In this document: piece by piece, positions 2,241 through 43,524 of the stretch | Layout: each line of letters begins with the position of its first letter | Position numbering within the stretch: the first letter of the stretch is position 1 | Assembly (NCBI GenBank): GCA_035084275.1 | Contig: CM068751.1 | Location: 7,564,001-7,628,000 of the forward strand | DNA from: Hydrolagus colliei | Lineage: Eukaryota | Direction: 5' to 3' | DNA: 64,000 bases | Notes under the pieces: model-generated | What the model saw: only the letters and a program-made list of their open reading frames with translations | The model's database searches: none | Told to the model about the DNA's origin: nothing | Translations under genes and position numbers: made by a program

Positions 2241-3015
2241 ACCAAAATGTGCCACGTGTTTAGACCTAATTACACTTTTGAACATTAAGATTGGGCAGGA
2301 TTTTCAAAATCAGCCTTGATTTCTTTCCTGGCTCGGAAACCCGTTTTTTTTTTCCACAGGATTTAAAAAGAACCGGAGAAAGTAGACTGCAGAAAGGGTG
2401 GTCTTAAGGCTAAGAACAGAAGGCATTCCAGGCATCAAGAGAGGAAAGGAGGGGGAGGGGAATTACAAAAAATAAAGCTACCAGAACCAGCTAAAGTAAA
2501 ATGTCAGTGGCATTACACATCCTAACATCTTGTAAGCCTGAGAGGCTAGTCATAGAGTAAAACTGTGTGATGCTGCTTAATTCTGTATAATTTTTAAGTG
2601 AGTTGCTTGTGTCTATTTCCTTTGAACTATGAATGTACTAAAAATGTCCTGATTGGTATTCACTTGTTTTGGAATCCTGGCTACAGTAAGTGAAAACATG
2701 AAAGGTAAAACTGGAGTTGGATTGTGAATTCTGCTTCATTCACATCCCACCAGATCAGAAAGCAAGTCACACAGCATTTAAGTCCCTTTAGCTCTAAAAT
2801 CCACCACATTGATTGGTTTGCAACTCACTTTAATCAACATTAAGAAGTTGAATGTTTTTTTGCCACTGTAAACGGAATCAAAATGAGTCTGGACTGTTTG
2901 GATCGAGAGTTTTGTAGTCAATCGGTCATAAATCTGTAAGGGACGTGAATATAAAGGCGCAGAGTAAACAGCAGGTTTGAAGTAAACACTGCCCTGAAAC
3001 AGGGACGTCTTCAAA

Positions 3016-3335
3016 ATAATAATAGTAATCCTTGCATTTGACATAGCGCTTTTCACATCTTCTAGATGTCACAAAGCGCTTCGCTGAATATACTGTAAAG
3101 TGAATTGACGGTATATTTGTGGATGAAACGCGACAGCCAATTGCGCACAGCAGCGACCCACAAACAGTCATGGATTGAAATATCCAATTTTGTTATTGTG
3201 TTTTTTTTTAGGGATTATTATTAGGAATGTGGAGTAAGGAAACTTGCCCAAGGTTTCGTCCTGACCTGCCTGGATTTGAACACAGATCTCTCGCTTGTAA
3301 GGCGAGTGCTCTCACCACTGAGCTACGGGATTCCG
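3016..3335 (-). mobile_element. Full-length tRNA-derived SINE with L2-like tail
   Basis: Head with A box (TAGCTCAGTGG) and B box (GTTCAAATCC) at about 3270-3330, body, and tail ...AAATGCAAGGATTACTATTATT. Confidence 0.9.
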
Positions 3336-3796
3336 CATGGGCAGAGAAAACATAGAGTTAAATAACATTAAAAACTGTCTTTTTCTGAGTGCTTTCCCAA
3401 ACTAAACGATCAAAGGGTTAGAGTGTTTTTGCGACCCAGTCACTACCTGAAGCCATTTGGAGTTCTTTTATTATTATTATTTACAGCACAGTTAATAGTA
3501 TGGATTGGAATTTATTTGGTTTTGCGCCACCTTGTGGCAGAAGTGCCATATATTTCCTCCTCCGCACTCCTTCCCCCAGCAGATTGGCAATTCTGGACTC
3601 TACAGGACTCTCTCTGATTAATGATCAGTGCAGGATTGCTAACCTCTATGATTTTGATCATTTACAAAATGCTACCTGCCATAACCCTGGCATATGATAA
3701 AACATGGGGATTGTTAGTAACTTTGAGCATAATGTCTGCAAGTCTAGTTTTTGAACTATCAGATTTCTAAAAGCTGCCATTAAATGCTGGACTAGA

Positions 3797-4097
3797 ATAA
3801 TAATCCTTAATAATCCTTGCATTAATATAGTGCTTTTCACATCTTCTGGACGTCTCAAAGCGCTTCACAGAATATACTGTAAAGTAAATTGACTGTATAT
3901 TTGTGGGCGAAACGCGGCAGCGTCCCACAAACAGTCGTGGTTTGAAATGACTCATTTATTATGTTTTTGGGGGGACAGATTATTATTCAGTACGTGGAGT
4001 AAGGAAACTTACCCAAGGTTTCACTCAGCCTAGATTTGAAACACAGGTCTCACGCTTATAAGGCAAGTGGTCTAACCACTGAGCTACAGGACTCCAA
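3797..4097 (-). mobile_element. Near full-length SINE (same family)
   Basis: Head, body and tail present, with a small internal deletion and a duplicated TAATCCTT in the tail. Confidence 0.9.
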
Positions 4098-4455
4098 ATG
4101 CTGGACTATTGCTAGAATACTGCATTCATGCTTATCATTTTGATGTTACACAGCATTGAATTGCACATGTGCAAGCGAATAAGGTAAATTATACTTTACA
4201 CCCCAACAGTGCTTCATAAATGCATTTTTTATCATTGCAATTACTTTAGTTTCAAATCGAATCAACTATTCTTGCGCCTTTCGATAAATTCATTTCAAAT
4301 ATTTTACATTTGCAGAACCAGAACAACATAATTCAAAATACTGCAGAAATACCAGTCGAGCACAAGAGAAATGGAACTGATCATCCCATTAACTGATTAC
4401 CAGTGACAGAAAAATCAAAAAATTATACTGGCCCAGGACCAGTGAAAATAACATC

Positions 4456-4570
4456 AGTAATAATCCTTGCATTTTATATGTGCCTCATCACATTGTCGAG
4501 ACATCTCAAAGCGCTTCATGAGATATAAAGTCAAGTGGATTGACAGTGTATTTTGTGAGCGAAACATAGC
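4456..4570 (-). mobile_element. SINE 3' fragment
   Basis: taatccttgcatttt...acatctcaaagcgcttcatgag matches the family tail. Confidence 0.75.
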
Positions 4571-4639
4571 TTTTGGATTTGTATAGAATATTATGGTATA
4601 GACTATATTTGTTACAGAAACAATTATAGACATAGAATT

Positions 4640-5000
4640 GCATACACTCATTCAGCTCAACTAGTGGTTACCCTACATCATTCTCCACCCCTTCTATTTG
4701 CATCTCCTTTACCCCATTTATTCCCTTTCCCTTCTTGTATGCATAAATTCTCCTCTTAAATATATTGATACTTTTTGCTTGAACCACCGTTCCAGCAATG
4801 ATGTTGCCACGAACCTCTGTATAAAGAAATACCTTGTAAACTTGCTGCTAATGGCTAATTTATATTTATGCTTATTTTTAAGGCATCAGCTAGCGGAAAA
4901 CAATTTATCAATGTACACTCTGTCAAACTTATGTTAATTACCTTTTGTCTTTTAACTTGTATCAATTCAAGGCTTATTGACAACCACTGGAACCCTGTCC
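4640..5000 (-). mobile_element. Degenerate CR1-like LINE 3' fragment
   Basis: Pyrimidine-rich tract (ccccatttattccctttccc...acgaacctctgtataaagaaat...gacaaccactggaa) similar to the copy at 46640-47090. Confidence 0.45.
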
Positions 5001-5787
5001 TTAAGCATTTTGTTTACGCAAACTGTGAACACAGGTTTCTGCTAATATAGATTAATGTCACCTTTCAATACTCAGTGTGTTGAGATGACAGGTAAATTGA
5101 AGACAATATAGCTTGCAGAGTAAATTCATCTCACACTTGAGTATGTGATGTTTGCAATTTTATAGTCAATTCAAAACATCAGAGCTAACTGAATGAGTTG
5201 TGTAGAAAGGAGCTTTCCTTTTGCCGTATAAAGAAAAGCAGTTGTCATGTACAGTATTTATAAAGGTTATGAATCATGTTTCAAATGTTAAGCAATACTT
5301 TTCTGAGCAAAAGCATAAAACGTGATGTTCAATACCACAGCAATAACAACAGTTTGCATTTATACTGTGCCTTACACATGGGATAATATTCACTGGTGCG
5401 GTGTCAGACACCGAACAAGAGAAAGGGTGGGATGGGGGGGAAAGAGGCCAACATACAAACTCACTCCACAGAAAACAAAATCAGGCATTTAAACGTACAT
5501 CTATTGTATCACTTAGCGATATACTAGTTTCTAGAGGAATAATGCTAGGAGAATTCCAGTTTCTCTCGTGTTATGTCAGTTATTCTCTTTAAGCGGCTGT
5601 CCTTGGCATTCCTTTGTTTTACTGCATTCAGCTGCTGCAAGTCCTCTTTGGCTTGTAGAACTTTAAAGCCAACTCCGATTCACCAGCTTGTGCCTTATAC
5701 ATACACACATTATTGAGGCTATTGAGTTGAAAATCTGTGTGTTTGTTTTTGGAGAGCAAGTTCCGACCCTCTTCCTTGCGCACACGT

Positions 5788-6117
5788 TTATAACACGTTT
5801 TCATCCTCAAAGTCAAACGCAAAAGATGAGACGTATTTTTTGGAATTTTTCTCTTTCAAATAATCCTCGTAAGGATCTTTCGTGGCTTTCTGATTCTTTG
5901 AACGCATATAGCCAAAAAAGACAGTTAAGGCCAGGAACGAGTAGAACAGCATGACAAAGATGACAAAGAAATAGGAGTTTTCGTACAGTTTCTGTTGAGG
6001 GTCTTCGGAAGCCGTGACATTCAGTTGCACTTCATTGACTTGCCTTTCATCCAAAGATTCTTTTAAAATCTTTCTGATGCACGTCGAAAAAAGGGCAATC
6101 AATGTAGTCTTGTTCAT
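5788..6117 (-). CDS. KCNE-family (MinK/MiRP) single-pass K+ channel beta subunit, 109 aa; candidate KCNE6-like
   Basis: MNKTT...NVT...ENSYFFVIFVMLFYSFLALTVFFGYMRSKNQKATKDPYEDYLKE. Two N-glycosylation sequons (NKT, NVT), one transmembrane helix, and the KCNE signature GYxRSK...DPYxxYL. ATG has A at -3 (GTCAAGATG). Single coding exon, as in other KCNE genes. The ORF stays open in frame up to 6366. Confidence 0.9.
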   Translation of the reverse strand: MNKTTLIALFSTCIRKILKESLDERQVNEVQLNVTASEDPQQKLYENSYFFVIFVMLFYSFLALTVFFGYMRSKNQKATKDPYEDYLKEKNSKKYVSSFAFDFEDENVL

Positions 6118-9100
6118 CTTGACGCTGCTCAGGAATAATGTGGCAGTGTGTAGACTTGCTGAGCGAAGATAACTGGACTCTAGATTTGGTAAGGAATGCA
6201 GAAGCCCGATAATAAAATAACATTCTTCAGATAATGTATCCTGTGGTACAATGTCAGCCCTCAGCCCTTGGTTATTTTGGTCCAGACGCATCATTTCAGT
6301 ATATTTATTTTCTTCTCTCTGAACGATCCCCCATTTATTTTCCACGAAAATGCCAAACTTCATCATTTATCTTAAAAAGATTAGCCTATACACACACACA
6401 CTGGAATATACTGTGCCACCAGTGCTGGCAATATACACGATCACTAAAGACCATTTACTGGCTGGCAATGTGTACAAAGCATAGTGAATTAACCCATGTG
6501 TTAATCAGAGAAAGGGATGAGTAAGGCATTGCAAACTTCACCCCCAATAGATGGATTGGGAGACTCCTGTACTGAATATGATTTAGTTGAAAATAATTTT
6601 GAATTCATTTTGGATGTATTTTTTTAAAAAATTGCAGACTATGTTTCCTATGTTTCCTTGCTGGATATTGAGTTGTTTGATCTGCTCCCCTTCTCTGAAG
6701 GACGGTCTCTTGTGTTGGGGTTGGTTCAAAAGCAAAAAAGGAGCAAACTAGCCACAAGTTTTTTATATTCAAAGTTCCTTTGTGGAAAGTTATCCCTCGC
6801 TGCTACAAACTGTCAGCATCGTAGACTTACAGTTCTGCTGTCAAATCTGTGGGGTTTATGATCGACGAGATCCTTTGTTAATTGTTTGTGTACTTTTTAT
6901 CCCCTTTAAACCTTTGATTGCCAGAACCAACTGAAACGAAAGACTGTGTCAAGGAACCATGGGGCCAAGGGTTAAGTTATCCTCAATATGTGTTTGCTTT
7001 GCATGTGCGCACTAGCACAATAAAGGTAAAGTGGTCAACAGTCCACTCTCCCTCAGTATTATGTTTTACAGGTTAAGTCACACTAAAGTAAATTGTTGCT
7101 TTACTGAGAAGTGAAACATTATCTCTCTGCATCAAGATTACTTCACTGGATGACAGTAACAGCTGCTTTTGTGATCTAGCCACTCTGGAATCATGGCAAA
7201 AACACAAGAGTTGCTTTGAAGTGGCATGCGCTTTAAAAAAAAGTCATATTTTGCAAGCTTAATGCTGTTGCTTTAAGTGTGACCTCTGCTCTGATTCTGT
7301 GATGACTGTTCCATGTACACATATTGTGTTATATCTGAATGGCTGTTGCAGCCTGTGTTTGTCATTAGAACCCAGCAGTAAAACCCATGAAAGCAAAAGC
7401 TTTTATATATATATATATCTATATATATATATTTAAAAAGGTTAGAAACCTAGCTTTACCCAGATCAGTAATAGCTGTGATGAAGTTCCAGATAAAAATA
7501 AATGAATGAACATCTTCAGTTTTATTCTTACTGCTTTTTCCTGATTCAGCTTCTTAAAGATAAAGCGTAAAATCAATTCTCATTTGAAAAAATTGGGATA
7601 TTCAGGTTGAATTCCTTCCAAATAGTTAATCATTAAATTACATTATGTTACATAAGGTTAGTTGCTGTTTGATGTATAAAATTGTGAGATTTTACAGCAG
7701 AAAAACAAGTGAGGAAATTTACAATATTAAATGAAATTTCATTTTGATTGCAAGAAGAAGGTCTAATTTAAGAAGAAATGATGTAATCTTCATATTATCT
7801 TTCTTCTTGATTTGGGCACTTTTTAAATGCGTTTACAACAATTCAGTCTTAAAACTTTAGACGGTTGAGGATATTAATCCTTTGTGCTATTATTTTTTCC
7901 AATAATAATGACTGTGCATTTTACTATATTATTTTGATCCACTGAAAAACATTAATAGCTTTTTCCGCAAAAAAAAACTACAGTAGCAACAGAATATTGT
8001 AGATAATTCTGTTGGATATTGATAAGTATTGGGAAAGTCTTTACCTGAAGCTGGGAGAATTCACATAAACTCAAATCCTGAGTTTTGTTGTTCTGTGTAA
8101 AACAGCAGTATTTCTACTTGACCTATTAAGTGACCAGTGTAATTGTTTGTGTGACATGAAGGTTTCTTCTCTGATCTACTTAGTGACACAGGTACCAAGT
8201 TATGGTTGAACTCTGGACTGGATATTCGCATAAACTCCAAACCTGAGTTTTATTGTCATCTGCTACTATCAGCACAGCAGAGAAACTAAAAGACAGTCAC
8301 AAGAAGTTTGAGACTTTACTTATAGTGACTTTGAACTGGTATTTCTTCAATAAAACAGAGGTCTCAGAGCTCAATTCAAGGCCTTTGTGAATCAAACCTG
8401 CTGTGATATCATAATCTAAAATGCAGAAATCCAAATATAGTAGTTACCCATAGATCATTCGTTGAATAAGAAATCCAATGAGAAATGTGAACCACATTAT
8501 CACACAACTTGAATAAGTATTATATAGTAGAATTGTGTAAATCTAAGTATGGCTGGTACGCTGTGACAAATTGCACAGAAAACAGAATGTTTCTCAAACA
8601 TCAACCTTCTCTGAATAGACTGGAAAGATGAAACTGTTGTGGATGTCAATTCTGACCTAGTGGGCATTGTCACCACATGGAGGGTGCCATGCATTACGAT
8701 GCACGAATCAATAATGATAAGAAATGTGCCATTACTGTACCGTGTTGCTCAGTGTTAAAGTAATGCGTGAACACACCCTCATTGAGAACAACAATCTATT
8801 GGAAGTCACGCACCTTTTGTAAGATCAACAAAAAACTTAAGGTAGATAATGTACCGAAGACATCAAAATGCAGAGTGTGTTGCTCATCATGTGAAGTGCT
8901 AACACACAATCCACTGGACGACAAGAAGGAGCCCAAGATATCTTCATATCACTCCCTGCTCACTAACATTACTCGTAAAAAAAAAACAAATCTCCAGTGG
9001 GAAGCCTATGTGTTTGATTTACGTGTACGAGACAAAGTGGTTACATAGTTTAATTGAGCAGTAACTCAGTTAATATGACAAATGTACAAGTCAATCAAAA

Positions 9101-20245: not shown

Positions 20246-20280
20246 TCATGCTATATCTGGCTTCAGATAATGAAAGGCAC
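20246..20280 (-). CDS. PAX3: Pax3 exon 9, coding part (PAX3d-type C-terminus)
   Basis: TTCCATTACAG|GTGCCTTTCATTATCTGAAGCCAGATATAGCATGA. In phase with exon 8; gives SAFHYLKPDIA*, the conserved vertebrate PAX3d terminus. Confidence 0.95.
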
Positions 20281-22014
20281 CTGTAATGGAAGTAAAAGAA
20301 ACTCAGGAATGCTCTTTGTGACAACATCATTGCAAGGGGCCATGTCAAATGCAGGTAGAATGTTGTCAGGGCTAATCATGAACTGCCAAAACTCCGAGGG
20401 TTACTTTATTTATATTAGGACAAGTTTGACAGTACCACACGGATCCGGGAGTATTGTCCAGGATGATGCCTGATTTGGCCTTTTTTTGGAACATGTGTTT
20501 TTAATAGTGACATTCCAGTGGCTGTTTTATTTTTTGACAGACCTTGGCCTGAGGTTCTACATAAATGGCAAGCATCTATTAAGTCTCAGCAATTAATCGC
20601 ATCAAGATGCTGCTGACAGCCCTGAAGATAATTATATATGTATATATTATATATAGTACTTTAACTCAAACCGTCGACAGATTATTTTATTAGAAAGAAG
20701 CAAAACATTTAAGTGCATGGTAATTTTCTTGTTTTACAACATATTTTGCACCCATTATCTGATTGATCTAACCCAATTTGTTTCTTTTCATGCTAGTTCG
20801 CTTTGTCATGACTAAAGAGTTTTCTTGCCAAAAATGATTTCCCCCCCTCACCCTCTATTTGTGCTAATTCCCTCCTTTGAACCAGCATTAGTAGTGTGAT
20901 TGCAAACACAGATTTGCTGAGCTTGTCAATTTTGTGGAACAAAAATAGGCCTCAAACTCGCAGGAAAGGAAATAGAGTATTTATCAACAGATGCTCAAGA
21001 ACCATTTGCAGTGTACATGTACAGCGAGGATACTATTTCCTAGGCTTTGCGAAGTATAAAATGAATGTGCAAATATATGTAATATGTAATGAATATCAAA
21101 TCATTGTGAATAGAATTGGTGTTGCTGAATTAAAATCTGATAGCTCACTCAAGTAAGAGTAAAGGTCAAATGAAAGTTAAGGATACAAAACAAATGGGCT
21201 CATCTGCCAACCAAAAACAGAAATTCGGTTACTCCCAAGTTACAAATGAATAGAAGATGATGTTGTCTAAGCTTTATTCAATCGAGTATTTCTAAAAAAA
21301 AATTAAGATTAAAAACTAGGTTGTCCTCTTAAAATAACTAAAGTAGTTAGTGTTTTTTTTAATAACTGAAAAACATGGCCCAGATAACATTAGCAATAAA
21401 AGTATCAGCTAACTGCGTCCTATTTTTTTTTTAAAAAGCAGATGATTACAGCTATGGGATAAAATATGTTCATTGTAGCTGAATATTGATTAGAGCAAAA
21501 GAAAACCTGATCTGCGCTGTATCAATCCAACAGGTGGTATTCTATCCAAAAATGATCAGTACAGGGCAAGAACATTACATTTTCAGTTATCAGCAAAGTA
21601 CAATTTGCTAAAAAGAAAAAAAAGTCAACCTTTCTGGCATTTGTCATAATACTTTTTACAGGCAATATTAATCCTGGAAGTCTCGTAAGGCAACATTCCA
21701 CACTCTCCTCCATTACGGACCATTTTTGTCAAGATACAAAATTGGCAGAATGTTATCCTTCTCTGTTCTATTAATACTTCTCTGTTCTCTCTCGCTCTCT
21801 CACTGATGTACATGGCAAAATAATAAATGAATGATATATTTCGCAAATCATTTCAAAACATTTGTACACAAAATTAACAATTGTCACACAGAATTGGACA
21901 TTCGTCCTCAAAGTTTGTACACTGTGTCACACATTTTAATACAGATTGATGAAGGATGAGGTGGGTAGGCGTTTTTATAGCTAAATGTGTTGCTTAGGTT
22001 TACATGGCACTTAC

Positions 22015-22261
22015 TTTGCCCATATTGTCCATATTGATAGCCGGTCACTGGATCCATGCTGTAACCTGATGAGCTGTAAGATGGTGGGCAGTAAGACTGA
22101 GAGGTGGGCAAGCTATCAAGGGGTTTCATCTGATCCAGCCGTTGACTACAACTGGCAGAGACGGATGTGGGTGGTTCCAAGCCTCCAGTCAGTGGTGATA
22201 GGGCATAGTCAGTCTGAGGTTGGTGTGGAACTCCGCCAGGATTTGCTAAGAGTCCCATTAC
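22015..22261 (-). CDS. PAX3: Pax3 exon 8
   Basis: ATCCCTCCAG|GTAATGGGA...GGGCAAA|GTAAGT; 247 bp. Encodes [82 protein letters not shown]. Confidence 0.96.
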
Positions 22262-22804
22262 CTGGAGGGATAAAGAAGGGCAGTGTTAACAAACATGCAC
22301 ATAACTGAAGATGGATGCCATTTTCAAAAGGGCCAATTTCAGTTCAACGCAAACAGATTCTTCAGAGCGAGGAGGACGCGGGGAATAGAACCATGTTTTT
22401 TTCTAATAGAGCCAACTCTGATTGTTTTATTGAGTTTAAAAGCCAAACTAGAAAAAACGACACGAGTATTGTCACCCAAAGATTCGTCTCTCGTTTGTAG
22501 AAACAAATACTTTGATCACAACACAATGGAAGATGGGAACAAGATAAAAGTCAGAAAACTGGTCATATTAAACATGACGCAAAGCATTATTTTCCACATA
22601 CAACTTGAAAAGTATACAATCAACTTCCAAGCTGAGTGTGAATGCCGTGAAATCGTTCACTAAACAAGTTGGCAGCTTCATTCATACAGTAAGAAAGACA
22701 TTAATTCAAATTTGTGGGCTGGCCTTTTCAATGTACCAGACGTGCCGGGTAACAGTGAACAAGGATCAAGCTGGGAACAAAGATTGATGTAGAAACAAGA
22801 CTGG

Positions 22805-38605: not shown

Positions 38606-38906
38606 CGTTTTTCTTTTAGATTTTAAGGCGTGTTTCAATCACCACTTTTATAAATGTTGGGTGCAGTTCTTAGCTAACTGTACAGTTTACCAACCTGCGT
38701 ATCAGGAAAATGCAATGTCTGTAAGGTCACAGTGGAAAAACTAGCAAAGGAAAAGAAAGTCTATATCCCAGAAGAGTCACATGAGCTGCACAGTCAGACT
38801 TGTGCAATGATTTCAATTTGGAAACGCTTCTTTAATTCTGCCTTGGGTAGTAAACTATTTGCTTCACGTATACACTAGACACTCTGTTTTGAATCACAGA
38901 ACTGAC

Positions 38907-39121
38907 CTGAGGTGAGAGGCCGTTGCTAACAGTTGGGTTCATGGGATTGGTGGGGCCGGCAGGAGACACAAAGCTGTCAGTGTACCCTGAAAATCCATGC
39001 CTGCTGGAGGATAAGCAATAAGCTGAGCTGCTGTCTGGAGTGGAGGGGAGGCTGCTCTGATGAACTGACGTTGGAGGCAGAGGCTGTGGCCTGTGAACCG
39101 TGTTGCCCGGATCTGACATTG
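38907..39121 (-). CDS. PAX3: Pax3 exon 7
   Basis: TGCTTTCAG|CAATGTCAG...CCTCAG|GTCAGT; 215 bp. Encodes (A)[71 protein letters not shown]. Confidence 0.96.
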
Positions 39122-40365
39122 CTGAAAGCACAATAACATTTATTGTATCATTAACGCTGCATCACTTTCTCTTCTTTGGAAACTGCTGAGCCAGTTCCAG
39201 AAATAATAAGATGATGTATCTGTTCACATTCAAAATGTTTTTATTCCCTCACCTTCTCCTCTCAGGGCTCGAAAAATACATTTTACAACTTAAAGGTACA
39301 GTGTCTCTATGAGAAATAATCCCGGGGCAAACCTTTTTTTTTCACATTTGTTTACAACCAGAGAACTTGAAGGACCCAATGACGAAATCGCGTCAAAATC
39401 AAAATATCATTCACCATTGTGTCACAACATGTGATGCTAATCATGAGGAAGGGGCACGTTTTTTTCTTGAGCACTTTTTTTCCCATTCAAAGCAAAATTG
39501 TCTGCCAAGCATCTCTTTGAGCTGAAGCCGGTGCCCCTTTAAAACATGACACCACGCTCTTTAGAATCAAGCGTTTGCTGAGAAGTCTCTAACCATCATC
39601 GTTCGTTCAATCAAACCACATTTGAAAATGCATTTCCTGAAAGATAGCCTCAGTTGTGCTTGATCGAAGAGGCCTTGATAATGTCCTGCATGATGTATTA
39701 TTGGTTTACACCATTACCAAGGGATATACAGCACAGTATGGGGGTTGGAGGCATTCTCTTAAAATGTAAAGACTTATTTATAATTTGATTGAATAGATCA
39801 GTGCACTGCCCAAATAGTTATTGCAAACAGACTATGGGGGATAAAGATTTATGTGCCCATTTTTCACTTCCATATCAATTTGTGATTGCGTGAATGATGT
39901 GACTTTAAAACCATCATGTTTACTGGGTAATTCAGAGATCAGGGAGTCTGGCAAAGGCAAGGAACCAGAGACAAAAAGGTTGTTTAAAAATGGAAACTAC
40001 TAAATACATGCTAAAGAGGCAGGTAATGAGTCATAAACAAGAGTGGAAAATATCTTACAAACTATAGCAAAAACAACTGAGACCTACAGAATAAAGTATA
40101 ACATTTTCAGGCATTGTATAGCGCCTTTCATGTCATAAAGTGCAAACATTTATGCATCGATTCAATAGTTTTCATTTTCAGCAAATCCTTTCTGGCTGCT
40201 TTTCACAGCGGAAGGAAGAGTTAAATTTATCCTTCCAATATCCGATTCACTTGTAAAAAAAAATAAAAAATCATATAGCACAAATGCAGATTTAGTCAGT
40301 GAGTTTGACTGCCAGAAACCTGTCATTTCAGGGCAGATTCAATCTGGGATCAGATATTTGTTTAC

Positions 40366-43191: not shown

Positions 43192-43524
<333 letters not shown>

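What the first reader, a model, noticed from the sequence alone, without database searches (positions are those of the whole stretch)
5788..6117. Intact KCNE-family gene just 3' of Pax3 that is not KCNE4: candidate KCNE6 ortholog
Seen: a 109-aa single-transmembrane protein with NKT/NVT sequons, NSY-TM-GYMRSK and DPYxxYL, on the Pax3 strand about 14 kb past its stop. Known: human KCNE4 lies on the 5' side of PAX3 and has a long C-terminus with a tetra-leucine motif, which is absent here. The TM aligns without gaps to KCNE3 (NSYMYILFVMFLFAVTVGSLILGYTRS). The positions equivalent to the gating triplet (KCNE1 F57-T58-L59, KCNE3 T71-V72-G73) read L-A-L, bulky-small-bulky as in KCNE1. A sixth family member, KCNE6, was reported from zebrafish as KCNE3-like in sequence, giving an IKs-like current, and pseudogenised in eutherians. 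Inference: this is that lineage in an early-diverging jawed vertebrate, or else an undescribed KCNE paralog. Small genes like this are easily missed by annotation.
Basis: partly seen in the sequence, partly recalled or inferred. Interest (0 to 1): 0.8.

Follow-up and report, generated by a model that had tools for sequence, protein, structure and literature searches.

The report
Chimaera KCNE6 gene beside Pax3
This is an intact small gene for a potassium-channel helper protein, the cartilaginous-fish counterpart of the recently described KCNE6, sitting just downstream of Pax3 as it does in other vertebrates; it is a sound annotation, not a new kind of gene.

Summary
A 109-aa ORF lies on the minus strand at 5788-6117. 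It passes Pfam's KCNE model (ISK_Channel, 31.5 bits against a cut-off of 22.1). It has two N-terminal sequons, one hydrophobic span and a DPY motif. Pax3 exons are on the same strand, and the Pax3 stop is 14.1 kb upstream of the ATG.

- Kasuya et al. 2024 place kcne6 next to pax3 and give its triplet as "LAL or MAL". Here L62-A63-L64 lie opposite human KCNE3 T71-V72-G73.
- In a tree of 35 proteins the ORF is sister to a Callorhinchus protein (80% identity), inside a chondrichthyan group. That group sits in a 22-row clade separate from KCNE3 and KCNE5 (100/98).
- The clade contains a cyprinid protein whose termini match the published zebrafish KCNE6 primers.

This is a new member of a known kind. 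Shark and chimaera orthologs already sit in databases under other names. Interest is modest.

The parts
5788..6117 (-). KCNE6 coding sequence in one uninterrupted ORF: 109 codons plus the TAA stop (5788-5790).
   Evidence: Pfam ISK_Channel 31.5 bits against cut-off 22.1. KCNE6-group profile 125.2 bits.
6106..6114 (-). First N-glycosylation sequon, N2-K3-T4. N2 is invariant in 24 of 24 aligned KCNE6-group proteins.
   Evidence: Glycosylation itself is inferred.
6013..6021 (-). Second sequon, N33-V34-T35. T35 is invariant in the 24-row alignment.
5914..5970 (-). Core of the single transmembrane helix, residues 50-68 (FFVIFVMLFYSFLALTVFF).
   Evidence: Best Kyte-Doolittle window, 2.58. The AlphaFold2 helix spans 41-79, with pLDDT about 90-94 for residues 51-70. 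Residues 44-77 are identical to the Callorhinchus protein.
5926..5934 (-). Gating 'triplet' L62-A63-L64 (CTG GCC TTA).
   Evidence: It lies opposite human KCNE3 T71-V72-G73 in a gapless alignment. The paper gives 'LAL or MAL' for KCNE6. L62 and A63 are invariant in the 24 rows.
5869..5877 (-). Juxtamembrane D81-P82-Y83 motif, preceded by the basic stretch Y70-M-R-S-K.
   Evidence: D81, P82 and Y83 are each conserved in at least 90% of the 24 rows. The motif aligns to DPY of human KCNE2 and KCNE3.
5800..5817 (-). Acidic C-terminal motif F101-D-F-E-D-E106, conserved in the KCNE6 group (consensus FDFEEE). In the six-row alignment A1 the two other KCNE6-group rows have YDFEEE and FYFEDE; the KCNE3 and KCNE5 rows lack it.
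   Evidence: E104 is invariant; F103 and E106 are at least 90% conserved.
6118..6145 (-). Candidate 3' splice site, ...cattattcctgagcag|cgtcaagATG, seven bases upstream of the start codon. A stands at -3 of the ATG.
   Evidence: Read from the sequence. No transcript evidence; inferred only.
20246..20278 (-). Pax3 terminal coding piece, AFHYLKPDIA plus stop (stop at 20246-20248).
   Evidence: The same C-terminus is present in the source-named pax-3 model P0045.
21911..22285 (-). Open stretch holding a Pax3 C-terminal exon ([10 protein letters not shown]...[10 protein letters not shown]).
   Evidence: 78% identity over 105 columns to P0045 'paired box protein pax-3 isoform x2', E 1e-53.
38835..39161 (-). 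Open stretch holding the Pax3 exon with the Pax7-type domain.
   Evidence: PF12360, E 9.4e-26. 73% identity to P0045.
43192..43524 (-). Open stretch holding the first part of the Pax3 homeodomain exon.
   Evidence: PF00046 Homeodomain, E 3.6e-15, profile positions 1-46 of 57.

Best explanation
The ORF is the KCNE6 gene of a chimaera-like cartilaginous fish. It is a single-coding-exon gene for a type I single-pass membrane protein that acts as an auxiliary (beta) subunit of voltage-gated K+ channels.

Shown here:
- It is a KCNE family member.
- It belongs to the orthogroup that includes the published zebrafish KCNE6.
- It keeps the ancestral position 14.1 kb downstream of Pax3 on the same strand.
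- Its transmembrane and juxtamembrane core has stayed unchanged since the split from Callorhinchus.

Inferred from the experiments of Kasuya et al. 2024 on zebrafish, coelacanth, frog, anole, chicken and koala KCNE6:
- The N-terminus is extracellular and glycosylated.
- The helix packs against the KCNQ1 voltage sensor.
- The complex opens more slowly and at more positive voltages (KCNE1-like, IKs-like), even though the sequence is closest to KCNE3.
- The heart is a likely site of expression.
For: Family membership:
- Pfam ISK_Channel scores above the curated cut-off.
- PDB sequence hits are to KCNE2, KCNE3 and KCNE1 only, at E 1.2e-05 to 3.7e-03.
- The ESM Atlas gives ISK_Channel clusters as the three nearest.

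Orthology:
- 39 of 43 word-sharing candidates passed E 1e-3. The best is Callorhinchus V9KT13 (80% identity, same length), then Scyliorhinus (60%).
- In the search of 1.84 billion representatives, 47 proteins reached E 1e-3. By profile score, 43 of the 47 are KCNE6-type, 1 KCNE3-type, 2 KCNE5-type and 1 unclassified.
- In the tree of 35 rows, the 22 KCNE6-like rows form one side of a branch (100/98). ORF plus Callorhinchus has 100/96 and the five chondrichthyans 99/96. The three starred subgroups (chondrichthyans, anurans, ray-finned fishes) fit the species tree; the forks joining them to the amniote rows are drawn open.
- Profile scores for the ORF are 125.2 bits (KCNE6 group), 41.8 (KCNE3) and 40.0 (KCNE5).
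- Link to the published gene: the primers translate to M-P-... and ...EEENSV-stop, against the cyprinid P0047, which reads MPL......EEENSI.
- The triplet is LAL.

Synteny:
- Pax3 lies upstream on the same strand.
- Three bird gene models fuse the Pax3 C-terminus to the KCNE6-like ORF: P0043, P0045 and P0079.
- The paper places kcne6 near pax3 'in most cases'.

Paralogy:
- Callorhinchus also has a separate KCNE5 (P0078/P0090). All named hits among the 120 listed are KCNE5.
- Ascaphus truei has KCNE6-like, KCNE3 and KCNE5 proteins (P0023, P0138, P0186).

Constraint:
- 22 of 109 residues differ from Callorhinchus, and none of these lies in residues 44-77. A run that long arose in 0.18% of 200,000 uniform placements.
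Against: - There is no transcript evidence for this species. The only public run that holds the locus is not on record as RNA.
- dN/dS could not be computed because no Callorhinchus DNA was reachable. 80% protein identity alone would be compatible with weak constraint outside the core.
- KCNE1, KCNE2 and KCNE4 are missing from the tree. They are excluded only indirectly: no such protein is among the 47 representatives at E 1e-3, and PDB KCNE1 and KCNE2 score 22-29 bits.
- With the single sequence, the best PDB hit is KCNE2 (E 1.2e-05) and not KCNE3 (2.9e-05). KCNE3 leads only with the 24-row profile (41.4 against 31.8 and 30.6 bits).
- Foldseek found no PDB match for the model, which is expected for a lone helix. 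Mean pLDDT is only 65.8.
- The paper's 'MAL' triplet was not seen in my 24 rows, which read LAL, LAM or LAF.
- No chondrichthyan KCNE6 has been tested on any channel.
Confidence: 0.9

Rival explanations
1. It is an intact-looking relic: a KCNE6 ortholog by descent that is no longer expressed or functional in this species, as in eutherians.
For: No RNA run is available. 20% of residues differ from Callorhinchus. KCNE6 is known to have decayed in one lineage, the eutherians.
Against: - The ORF has the same length as the Callorhinchus protein, with no stop or frameshift.
- All 12 columns that are invariant in the 24-row alignment are kept.
- The differences avoid residues 44-77 (P about 0.002).
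- The paper describes the eutherian relics as having relatively short N and C termini, which this ORF does not have.
- The Callorhinchus ortholog is a UniProt entry, V9KT13. I recall, without having checked, that such entries derive from cDNA.
Confidence: 0.07
2. It is a divergent KCNE3, KCNE4 or KCNE5, or an undescribed seventh paralog, and not KCNE6.
For: Databases name members of this group KCNE3, KCNE3-like or KCNE4. KCNE1, KCNE2 and KCNE4 are not in my tree.
Against: - The clade is separate from KCNE3 and KCNE5 at 100/98.
- The profile score margin is more than 80 bits.
- The triplet is LAL, not TVG.
- The same species carry KCNE3 or KCNE5 as well.
- The clade is tied to zebrafish KCNE6 by the primers and by the pax3 position.
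- There is no LLLL and only a 38-residue tail.
Confidence: 0.03

Closest known systems
KCNE6 (Kasuya et al. 2024, Commun Biol 7:1662, PMC11659587; zebrafish, coelacanth, frog, anole, chicken, koala)
   Same: It is adjacent to pax3, has the LAL triplet, is about 104-124 aa long, has KCNE3 as its closest classical paralog by profile, and falls in the same clade.
   Different: - The lineage differs: no cartilaginous fish is named in the main text or in the Fig. 3 legend.
- Like tetrapods, it keeps the GY(M/V)RSK basic stretch. The teleost proteins, including the cyprinid tied to the tested zebrafish protein, have FK(C/G)F followed by acidic residues instead.
- It is functionally untested.
Callorhinchus milii V9KT13, 'KCNE3-like protein' (P0001)
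   Same: 80% identity, the same 109-aa length with no gaps, residues 44-77 identical, and sister in the tree at 100/96.
   Different: 22 substitutions, mostly in the N-terminal helix and the distal tail. It is deposited under a KCNE3-like name.
KCNE3 (human structures 6V01, 9WD8, 2NDJ)
   Same: Gapless alignment over the transmembrane helix and DPY motif. It is the best PDB family for the KCNE6 profile, at 41.4 bits.
   Different: It has the triplet TVG where the ORF has LAL. It forms a separate clade (98/94). KCNE3 makes KCNQ1 constitutively open, whereas KCNE6 shifts activation to positive voltages (paper). It lacks the acidic FDFEEE tail.
KCNE1 (minK)
   Same: The expected functional effect is similar (slow activation at positive voltages), according to the paper's zebrafish data.
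   Different: Sequence similarity is weak, 22.1 bits and E 1.7e-03 in the PDB. The triplet is FTL in the paper's account.

Membership tests
KCNE family (Pfam PF02060 ISK_Channel) | Match to the family profile above the curated threshold | tested here: met
   31.5 bits against the gathering score of 22.1, E 1.6e-07, residues 11-90.
KCNE family (Pfam PF02060 ISK_Channel) | Small single-pass protein with N-terminal sequons ahead of the helix and a DP[YF] motif after a basic stretch | tested here: met
   One hydrophobic span at 50-68; sequons at residues 2 and 33; YMRSK then DPY at 81-83. Model helices are 3-31, 41-79 and 82-92. Topology and glycosylation are inferred.
KCNE family (Pfam PF02060 ISK_Channel) | Modulates KCNQ1 or other Kv channels | not testable with these tools
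   This needs co-expression and voltage clamp.
KCNE6 orthogroup | Lies next to pax3 | tested here: met
   The Pax3 stop at 20246 and the KCNE ATG at 6117 are on the same strand, 14.1 kb apart. The paper reports this position for zebrafish and 'most cases'.
KCNE6 orthogroup | Triplet 'LAL' or 'MAL' in mid-helix | tested here: met
   L62-A63-L64 lie opposite KCNE3 T71-V72-G73. The paper's statement was read.
KCNE6 orthogroup | Groups with zebrafish KCNE6 and apart from KCNE3 and KCNE5 | tested here: met
   The 22-row clade has 100/98 support and contains the cyprinid P0047, which the published primers tie to DrKCNE6. The zebrafish protein itself was not in hand.
KCNE6 orthogroup | Groups apart from KCNE1, KCNE2 and KCNE4 | not tested
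   No KCNE1, KCNE2 or KCNE4 sequences could be fetched. The evidence is indirect only: none is among the 47 representatives at E 1e-3, and PDB KCNE1 and KCNE2 score 22-29 bits.
KCNE6 orthogroup | Expressed (in the heart in zebrafish) and shifts KCNQ1 activation to positive voltages | not testable with these tools
   No RNA run holds the locus. There is no electrophysiology.
KCNE3 | TVG triplet and membership of the KCNE3 clade | tested here: not met
   The triplet is LAL. The KCNE3 rows form their own clade at 98/94. The ORF scores 41.8 bits on the KCNE3 profile against 125.2 on the KCNE6 profile.
   The ORF has no LLLL and only 38 residues after residue 71 (translation). No KCNE4 sequence was compared.
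KCNE5 | Membership of the KCNE5 clade | tested here: not met
   The KCNE5 rows, including Callorhinchus P0078, form their own clade at 97/93. The ORF scores 40.0 bits on the KCNE5 profile.

The most novel reading that the evidence does not exclude
KCNE6 was already fixed next to Pax3 in the last common ancestor of jawed vertebrates. In cartilaginous fishes, sauropsids and amphibians its native partner may not be KCNQ1 (or not only KCNQ1). It may instead be the KCNQ1-like paralog Kv7.1L, which a 2025 preprint reports as lost in mammals (10.1101/2025.09.21.677649, passages read). On this reading, the decay of KCNE6 in eutherians would be a co-loss with its channel. Nothing here tests the pairing. 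Marsupials, which keep a working KCNE6 according to Kasuya et al., would need checking for Kv7.1L.
Probability: 0.1. Interest if true: 0.55.

Novelty: new member of a known kind. Interest (0 to 1): 0.3.

Why it matters
**Dating the gene.** Together with the shark proteins found here, this places KCNE6 in both branches of cartilaginous fishes. The gene and its linkage to Pax3 therefore date to at least the jawed-vertebrate ancestor. This is one step deeper than the species named in the main text of the 2024 paper.

**Annotation.** The exact protein is not in the 15-billion-sequence collection, so the gene is probably unannotated in this genome. Its relatives carry a jumble of names: KCNE3, KCNE3-like, KCNE4, Pax-3 and hypothetical. 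A consistent KCNE6 label would help annotation.

**Functional comparison.** The chimaera protein keeps the tetrapod-type basic juxtamembrane stretch, which teleosts lack. It is therefore a useful comparison point for working out how a KCNE3-like sequence yields KCNE1-like gating.

It does not change what is known about the family.

Tried and rejected
- **Synteny in other species.** I tried to fetch genomic context for the Scyliorhinus and Xenopus orthologs. I relied instead on fused Pax3-KCNE6 gene models in three birds and on the paper's text.
- **Expression.** The look-up of sequencing runs gave one run, not on record as RNA. Read laying on it gave contigs only, which confirm the sequence but say nothing about transcription.
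- **Full KCNE1-6 tree.** The alignment search listed only KCNE6, KCNE3 and KCNE5 types among its best 120 of 543. The third search, with Callorhinchus KCNE5 as query, listed KCNE5 only. KCNE1, KCNE2 and KCNE4 therefore stayed out of reach.
- **Fold comparison.** The AlphaFold2 model has mean pLDDT 65.8. Foldseek against the PDB found nothing at E up to 10. This is uninformative for a single helix, so I did not pursue it.
- **Longer ORF.** The in-frame extension up to 6366 (192 aa) was rejected as coding. 19 of the 24 aligned KCNE6-group proteins start at the MN-x-T/S methionine, and the other five have only 4-7 extra residues.
- **Earlier scan notes.** There was nothing near this place. A word search gave only Kir6.2 notes, which call this genome a chimaera.
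- **Prior description in cartilaginous fishes.**
  - The search for 'KCNE6' found 6 papers, 5 listed.
  - 'KCNE' with 'Callorhinchus' found 2 papers.
  - 'KCNE' with 'cartilaginous fish' and 'KCNQ1' found 3 papers.
  - In PMC11659587 and in the lamprey preprint, the words shark, cartilaginous, chondrichth and Callorhinchus gave 0 occurrences where searched.
Supplementary Fig. 5 of PMC11659587 may list further species.
- **Side checks.** PMC10991444 had nothing relevant.
Full report
**Observation**

The window carries an ORF of 109 codons on the minus strand, with ATG at 6117 and TAA at 5790-5788. Its features are as follows.
- It has two N-x-T sequons, at N2 and N33.
- It has a single strongly hydrophobic span. 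The best 19-residue window is residues 50-68, with mean hydropathy 2.58.
- NSY precedes the span, GYMRSK follows it, and DPYEDYL comes after that.

An in-frame extension upstream to 6366 exists (192 aa). It is not supported: 19 of the 24 aligned KCNE6-group proteins begin at the MN-x-T/S methionine, and the other five carry only 4-7 extra residues.

A 2890-nt contig from the one public run that holds the locus covers 4536-7393. It differs at two places, 5068 and 6626, both outside the ORF. That run may be the assembly's own sample, so it is not independent support.

**Neighbourhood**

Pax3 exons lie on the same strand at higher coordinates.
- A homeodomain exon lies within 43192-43524, and a Pax7-domain exon within 38835-39161 (Pfam).
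- An exon within 21911-22285 is 78% identical to a source-named pax-3 model. The exon at 38835-39161 is 73% identical to the same model.
- The terminal AFHYLKPDIA-stop ends at 20246.

**Family**

- Pfam's ISK_Channel model matches residues 11-90 at 31.5 bits, against a curated cut-off of 22.1.
- Among solved structures, only KCNE chains match at E below 0.01: KCNE2 at 1.2e-05, KCNE3 at 2.9e-05 to 2.5e-04, and KCNE1 at 1.7e-03 to 3.7e-03.
- Residues 46-90 align without gaps to residues 55-99 of human KCNE3. This puts L62-A63-L64 opposite T71-V72-G73.
- A 24-sequence profile of the orthogroup ranks KCNE3 first (41.4 bits), then KCNE2 (31.8) and KCNE1 (30.6).
- AlphaFold2 with that alignment gives helices 3-31, 41-79 and 82-92. 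Confidence is about 90-94 over residues 51-70 and the tail is disordered. Mean pLDDT is 65.8.
- Foldseek found no PDB match, which says little for a lone helix.
- The ESM Atlas lists three ISK_Channel clusters as nearest, with scores 0.95 to 0.92.

**Orthology**

Database searches:
- The word-indexed search gave 39 proteins at E up to 1e-3 among 43 candidates.
  - The best is Callorhinchus milii V9KT13, named 'KCNE3-like' (E 4.7e-49, 80% identity, 109 aa).
  - Next is a Scyliorhinus hypothetical protein (60%).
  - Amphibian, reptile and bird proteins follow at 44-65% identity.
- The exact window protein is not in the collection.
- The exhaustive search of 1.84 billion representatives gave 47 proteins at E up to 1e-3.
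- I scored those 47 with profiles of the three groups. 43 of 47 are KCNE6-type, 1 is KCNE3-type (P0071), 2 are KCNE5-type (P0076, P0078) and 1 (P0051, 825 aa) matched none. Four of the 47 were among the 13 sequences used to build the KCNE6 profile.
- The window ORF, which was not used in any profile, scores 125.2 bits (KCNE6), 41.8 (KCNE3) and 40.0 (KCNE5).

Tree: a maximum-likelihood tree of 35 proteins was built with IQ-TREE under LG+C20. These rows were my own choice from the roughly 170 proteins then in hand. I favoured full-length, named proteins from diverse taxa.
- The 22 KCNE6-like rows form one side of a branch at 100/98.
- The 8 KCNE3 rows have 98/94 support and the 5 KCNE5 rows 97/93.
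- The window ORF is sister to Callorhinchus (100/96), within a group of five chondrichthyans (99/96).
- Chondrichthyans, anurans (99/96) and ray-finned fishes (96/89) are each starred. The forks that join them to the four amniote rows are drawn open, so the tree does not resolve tetrapods as one group.

**Link to the published KCNE6**

Kasuya et al. 2024 (PMC11659587) is the source. I read the abstract, sections 6, 7, 8, 10, 13, 15 and 17, and the find passages. The paper reports the following.
- Zebrafish kcne6 lies between a lincRNA and pax3.
- kcne6 ORFs lie near pax3 'in most cases'.
- The triplet is 'LAL' or 'MAL'.
- KCNE3 is the most similar classical member.
- The protein gives a KCNE1-like positive shift of KCNQ1 activation.
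- Zebrafish kcne6 is expressed in the heart.
- The gene has decayed in eutherians.

The paper prints no protein sequence in its text, but it does print its RT-PCR primers. They translate to M-P-... at the start and ...EEENSV-stop at the end. The cyprinid cluster P0047 (Labeo, Cirrhinus, Cyprinus; 124 aa) starts MPL... and ends ...EEENSI, and has the LAL triplet. P0047 sits inside the 22-row clade. The clade is therefore the KCNE6 orthogroup.

**Independent support for the linkage**

Three bird gene models fuse the Pax3 C-terminus directly to the KCNE6-like sequence. They are Colinus P0043, Limosa P0045 ('pax-3 isoform x2') and Callipepla P0079, which is a whole Pax3 plus KCNE6 at 679 aa. This requires same-strand adjacency. 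The Labeo protein is even named 'Paired box Pax-3'.

**Paralogy**

Many species carry this gene together with a KCNE3 or a KCNE5.
- Callorhinchus has P0001 and the KCNE5 P0078/P0090. All named hits among the 120 listed are KCNE5.
- Ascaphus has P0023, P0138 and P0186.
- Xenopus tropicalis has P0030 and P0172.
- Ambystoma has P0004 and P0110.
- Anolis has P0018 and P0210.

**Constraint**

Against Callorhinchus, 22 of 109 residues differ and there are no gaps. None of the differences falls in residues 44-77. A run that long arose in 0.18% of 200,000 uniform placements.

Across the 24 aligned proteins, N2, C13, T35, N47, V55, M56, F58, Y59, L62, A63, F67 and E104 are invariant, and all are present in the ORF. 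An acidic C-terminal motif (FDFEDE here, consensus FDFEEE) is conserved across the 24 KCNE6-group rows. The KCNE3 and KCNE5 rows of alignment A1 lack it.

**Mechanism**

Shown here: family, orthogroup, position, intact frame, and a conserved core.

Inferred:
- The protein has a type I topology with a glycosylated extracellular N-terminus.
- It assembles with KCNQ1 through the helix and the juxtamembrane stretch.
- It gives a slower, positively shifted, IKs-like current, as measured by Kasuya et al. for zebrafish, coelacanth, frog, anole, chicken and koala proteins.

My confidence in the identity is about 0.9. My confidence in the specific gating effect is lower, about 0.6. No cartilaginous-fish KCNE6 has been tested, and the zebrafish protein differs in the stretch after the helix. 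Teleosts have FK(C/G)F followed by acidic residues, whereas the chimaera, sharks and tetrapods have G(Y/H)xR(S/G/A)K.

**What is missing**

- There is no RNA data for this species.
- No DNA of relatives was available for dN/dS.
- KCNE1, KCNE2 and KCNE4 are not in the tree.
- The candidate splice acceptor seven bases upstream of the ATG and the first AATAAA 1066 nt past the stop are readings of the sequence only.

**Novelty**

- The searches, and the word look-ups, found no paper that describes KCNE6 in a cartilaginous fish.
- Supplementary Fig. 5 of PMC11659587, which I could not see, may list more species.
- The paper does state that kcne6 ORFs exist in all vertebrates it surveyed.
- Chondrichthyan orthologs are already deposited under other names.

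This is a new member of a known kind. It is useful for annotation and for dating the gene to the jawed-vertebrate ancestor, but it is not surprising to a specialist.

**Source organism**

The source is a cartilaginous fish closer to Callorhinchus than to sharks. Earlier notes of this scan on the same genome call it a chimaera.

Noticed in passing
window 3001-4500: Interspersed repeats. The summed contig depth in the DNA run reaches 0.4 to 6.3 million in several 200-base bins, against about 60-80 over the single-copy flanks. Hundreds of joints and loose ends are reported there.
   Followed up: no
proteins P0043, P0045, P0079 (birds): Deposited gene models splice the end of Pax3 (...AFHYLKPDIA, or ...GQYGQS) into the KCNE6-like ORF. 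They are either prediction artefacts or a hint of read-through transcripts from Pax3 into KCNE6.
   Followed up: partly
hits: Members of one orthogroup carry at least five kinds of name in public databases: KCNE3, KCNE3-like, KCNE4, 'Paired box Pax-3', and hypothetical or uncharacterized. None in the listings is named KCNE6.
   Followed up: partly
proteins P0008 and P0199 (Mauremys mutica): The turtle's KCNE6-like protein (KIL84_022724) and its KCNE5 (KIL84_022713) are both reported from a contig of 106,458,794 bases, with locus tags 11 apart. This suggests that the two genes may be linked in turtles. In Xenopus tropicalis and Gekko they are on contigs of different lengths.
   Followed up: no
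alignment A2: Teleost KCNE6 proteins lack the basic GY-x-RSK stretch after the helix and have an acidic run instead. Sharks have GHLR. The third triplet position varies (L, M or F), while the first two (L, A) are invariant. The paper's 'MAL' was not seen in these 24 rows.
   Followed up: partly
window 6118-6366, minus strand: The reading frame stays open for 83 codons upstream of the conserved start, with two ATGs at its far end. No homolog supports it as coding.
   Followed up: partly
protein P0051: This 825-aa protein matched the ORF's helix region in six stretches (E 4.9e-10) but matched none of the three KCNE profiles. It is probably a repetitive or mistranslated sequence.
   Followed up: no
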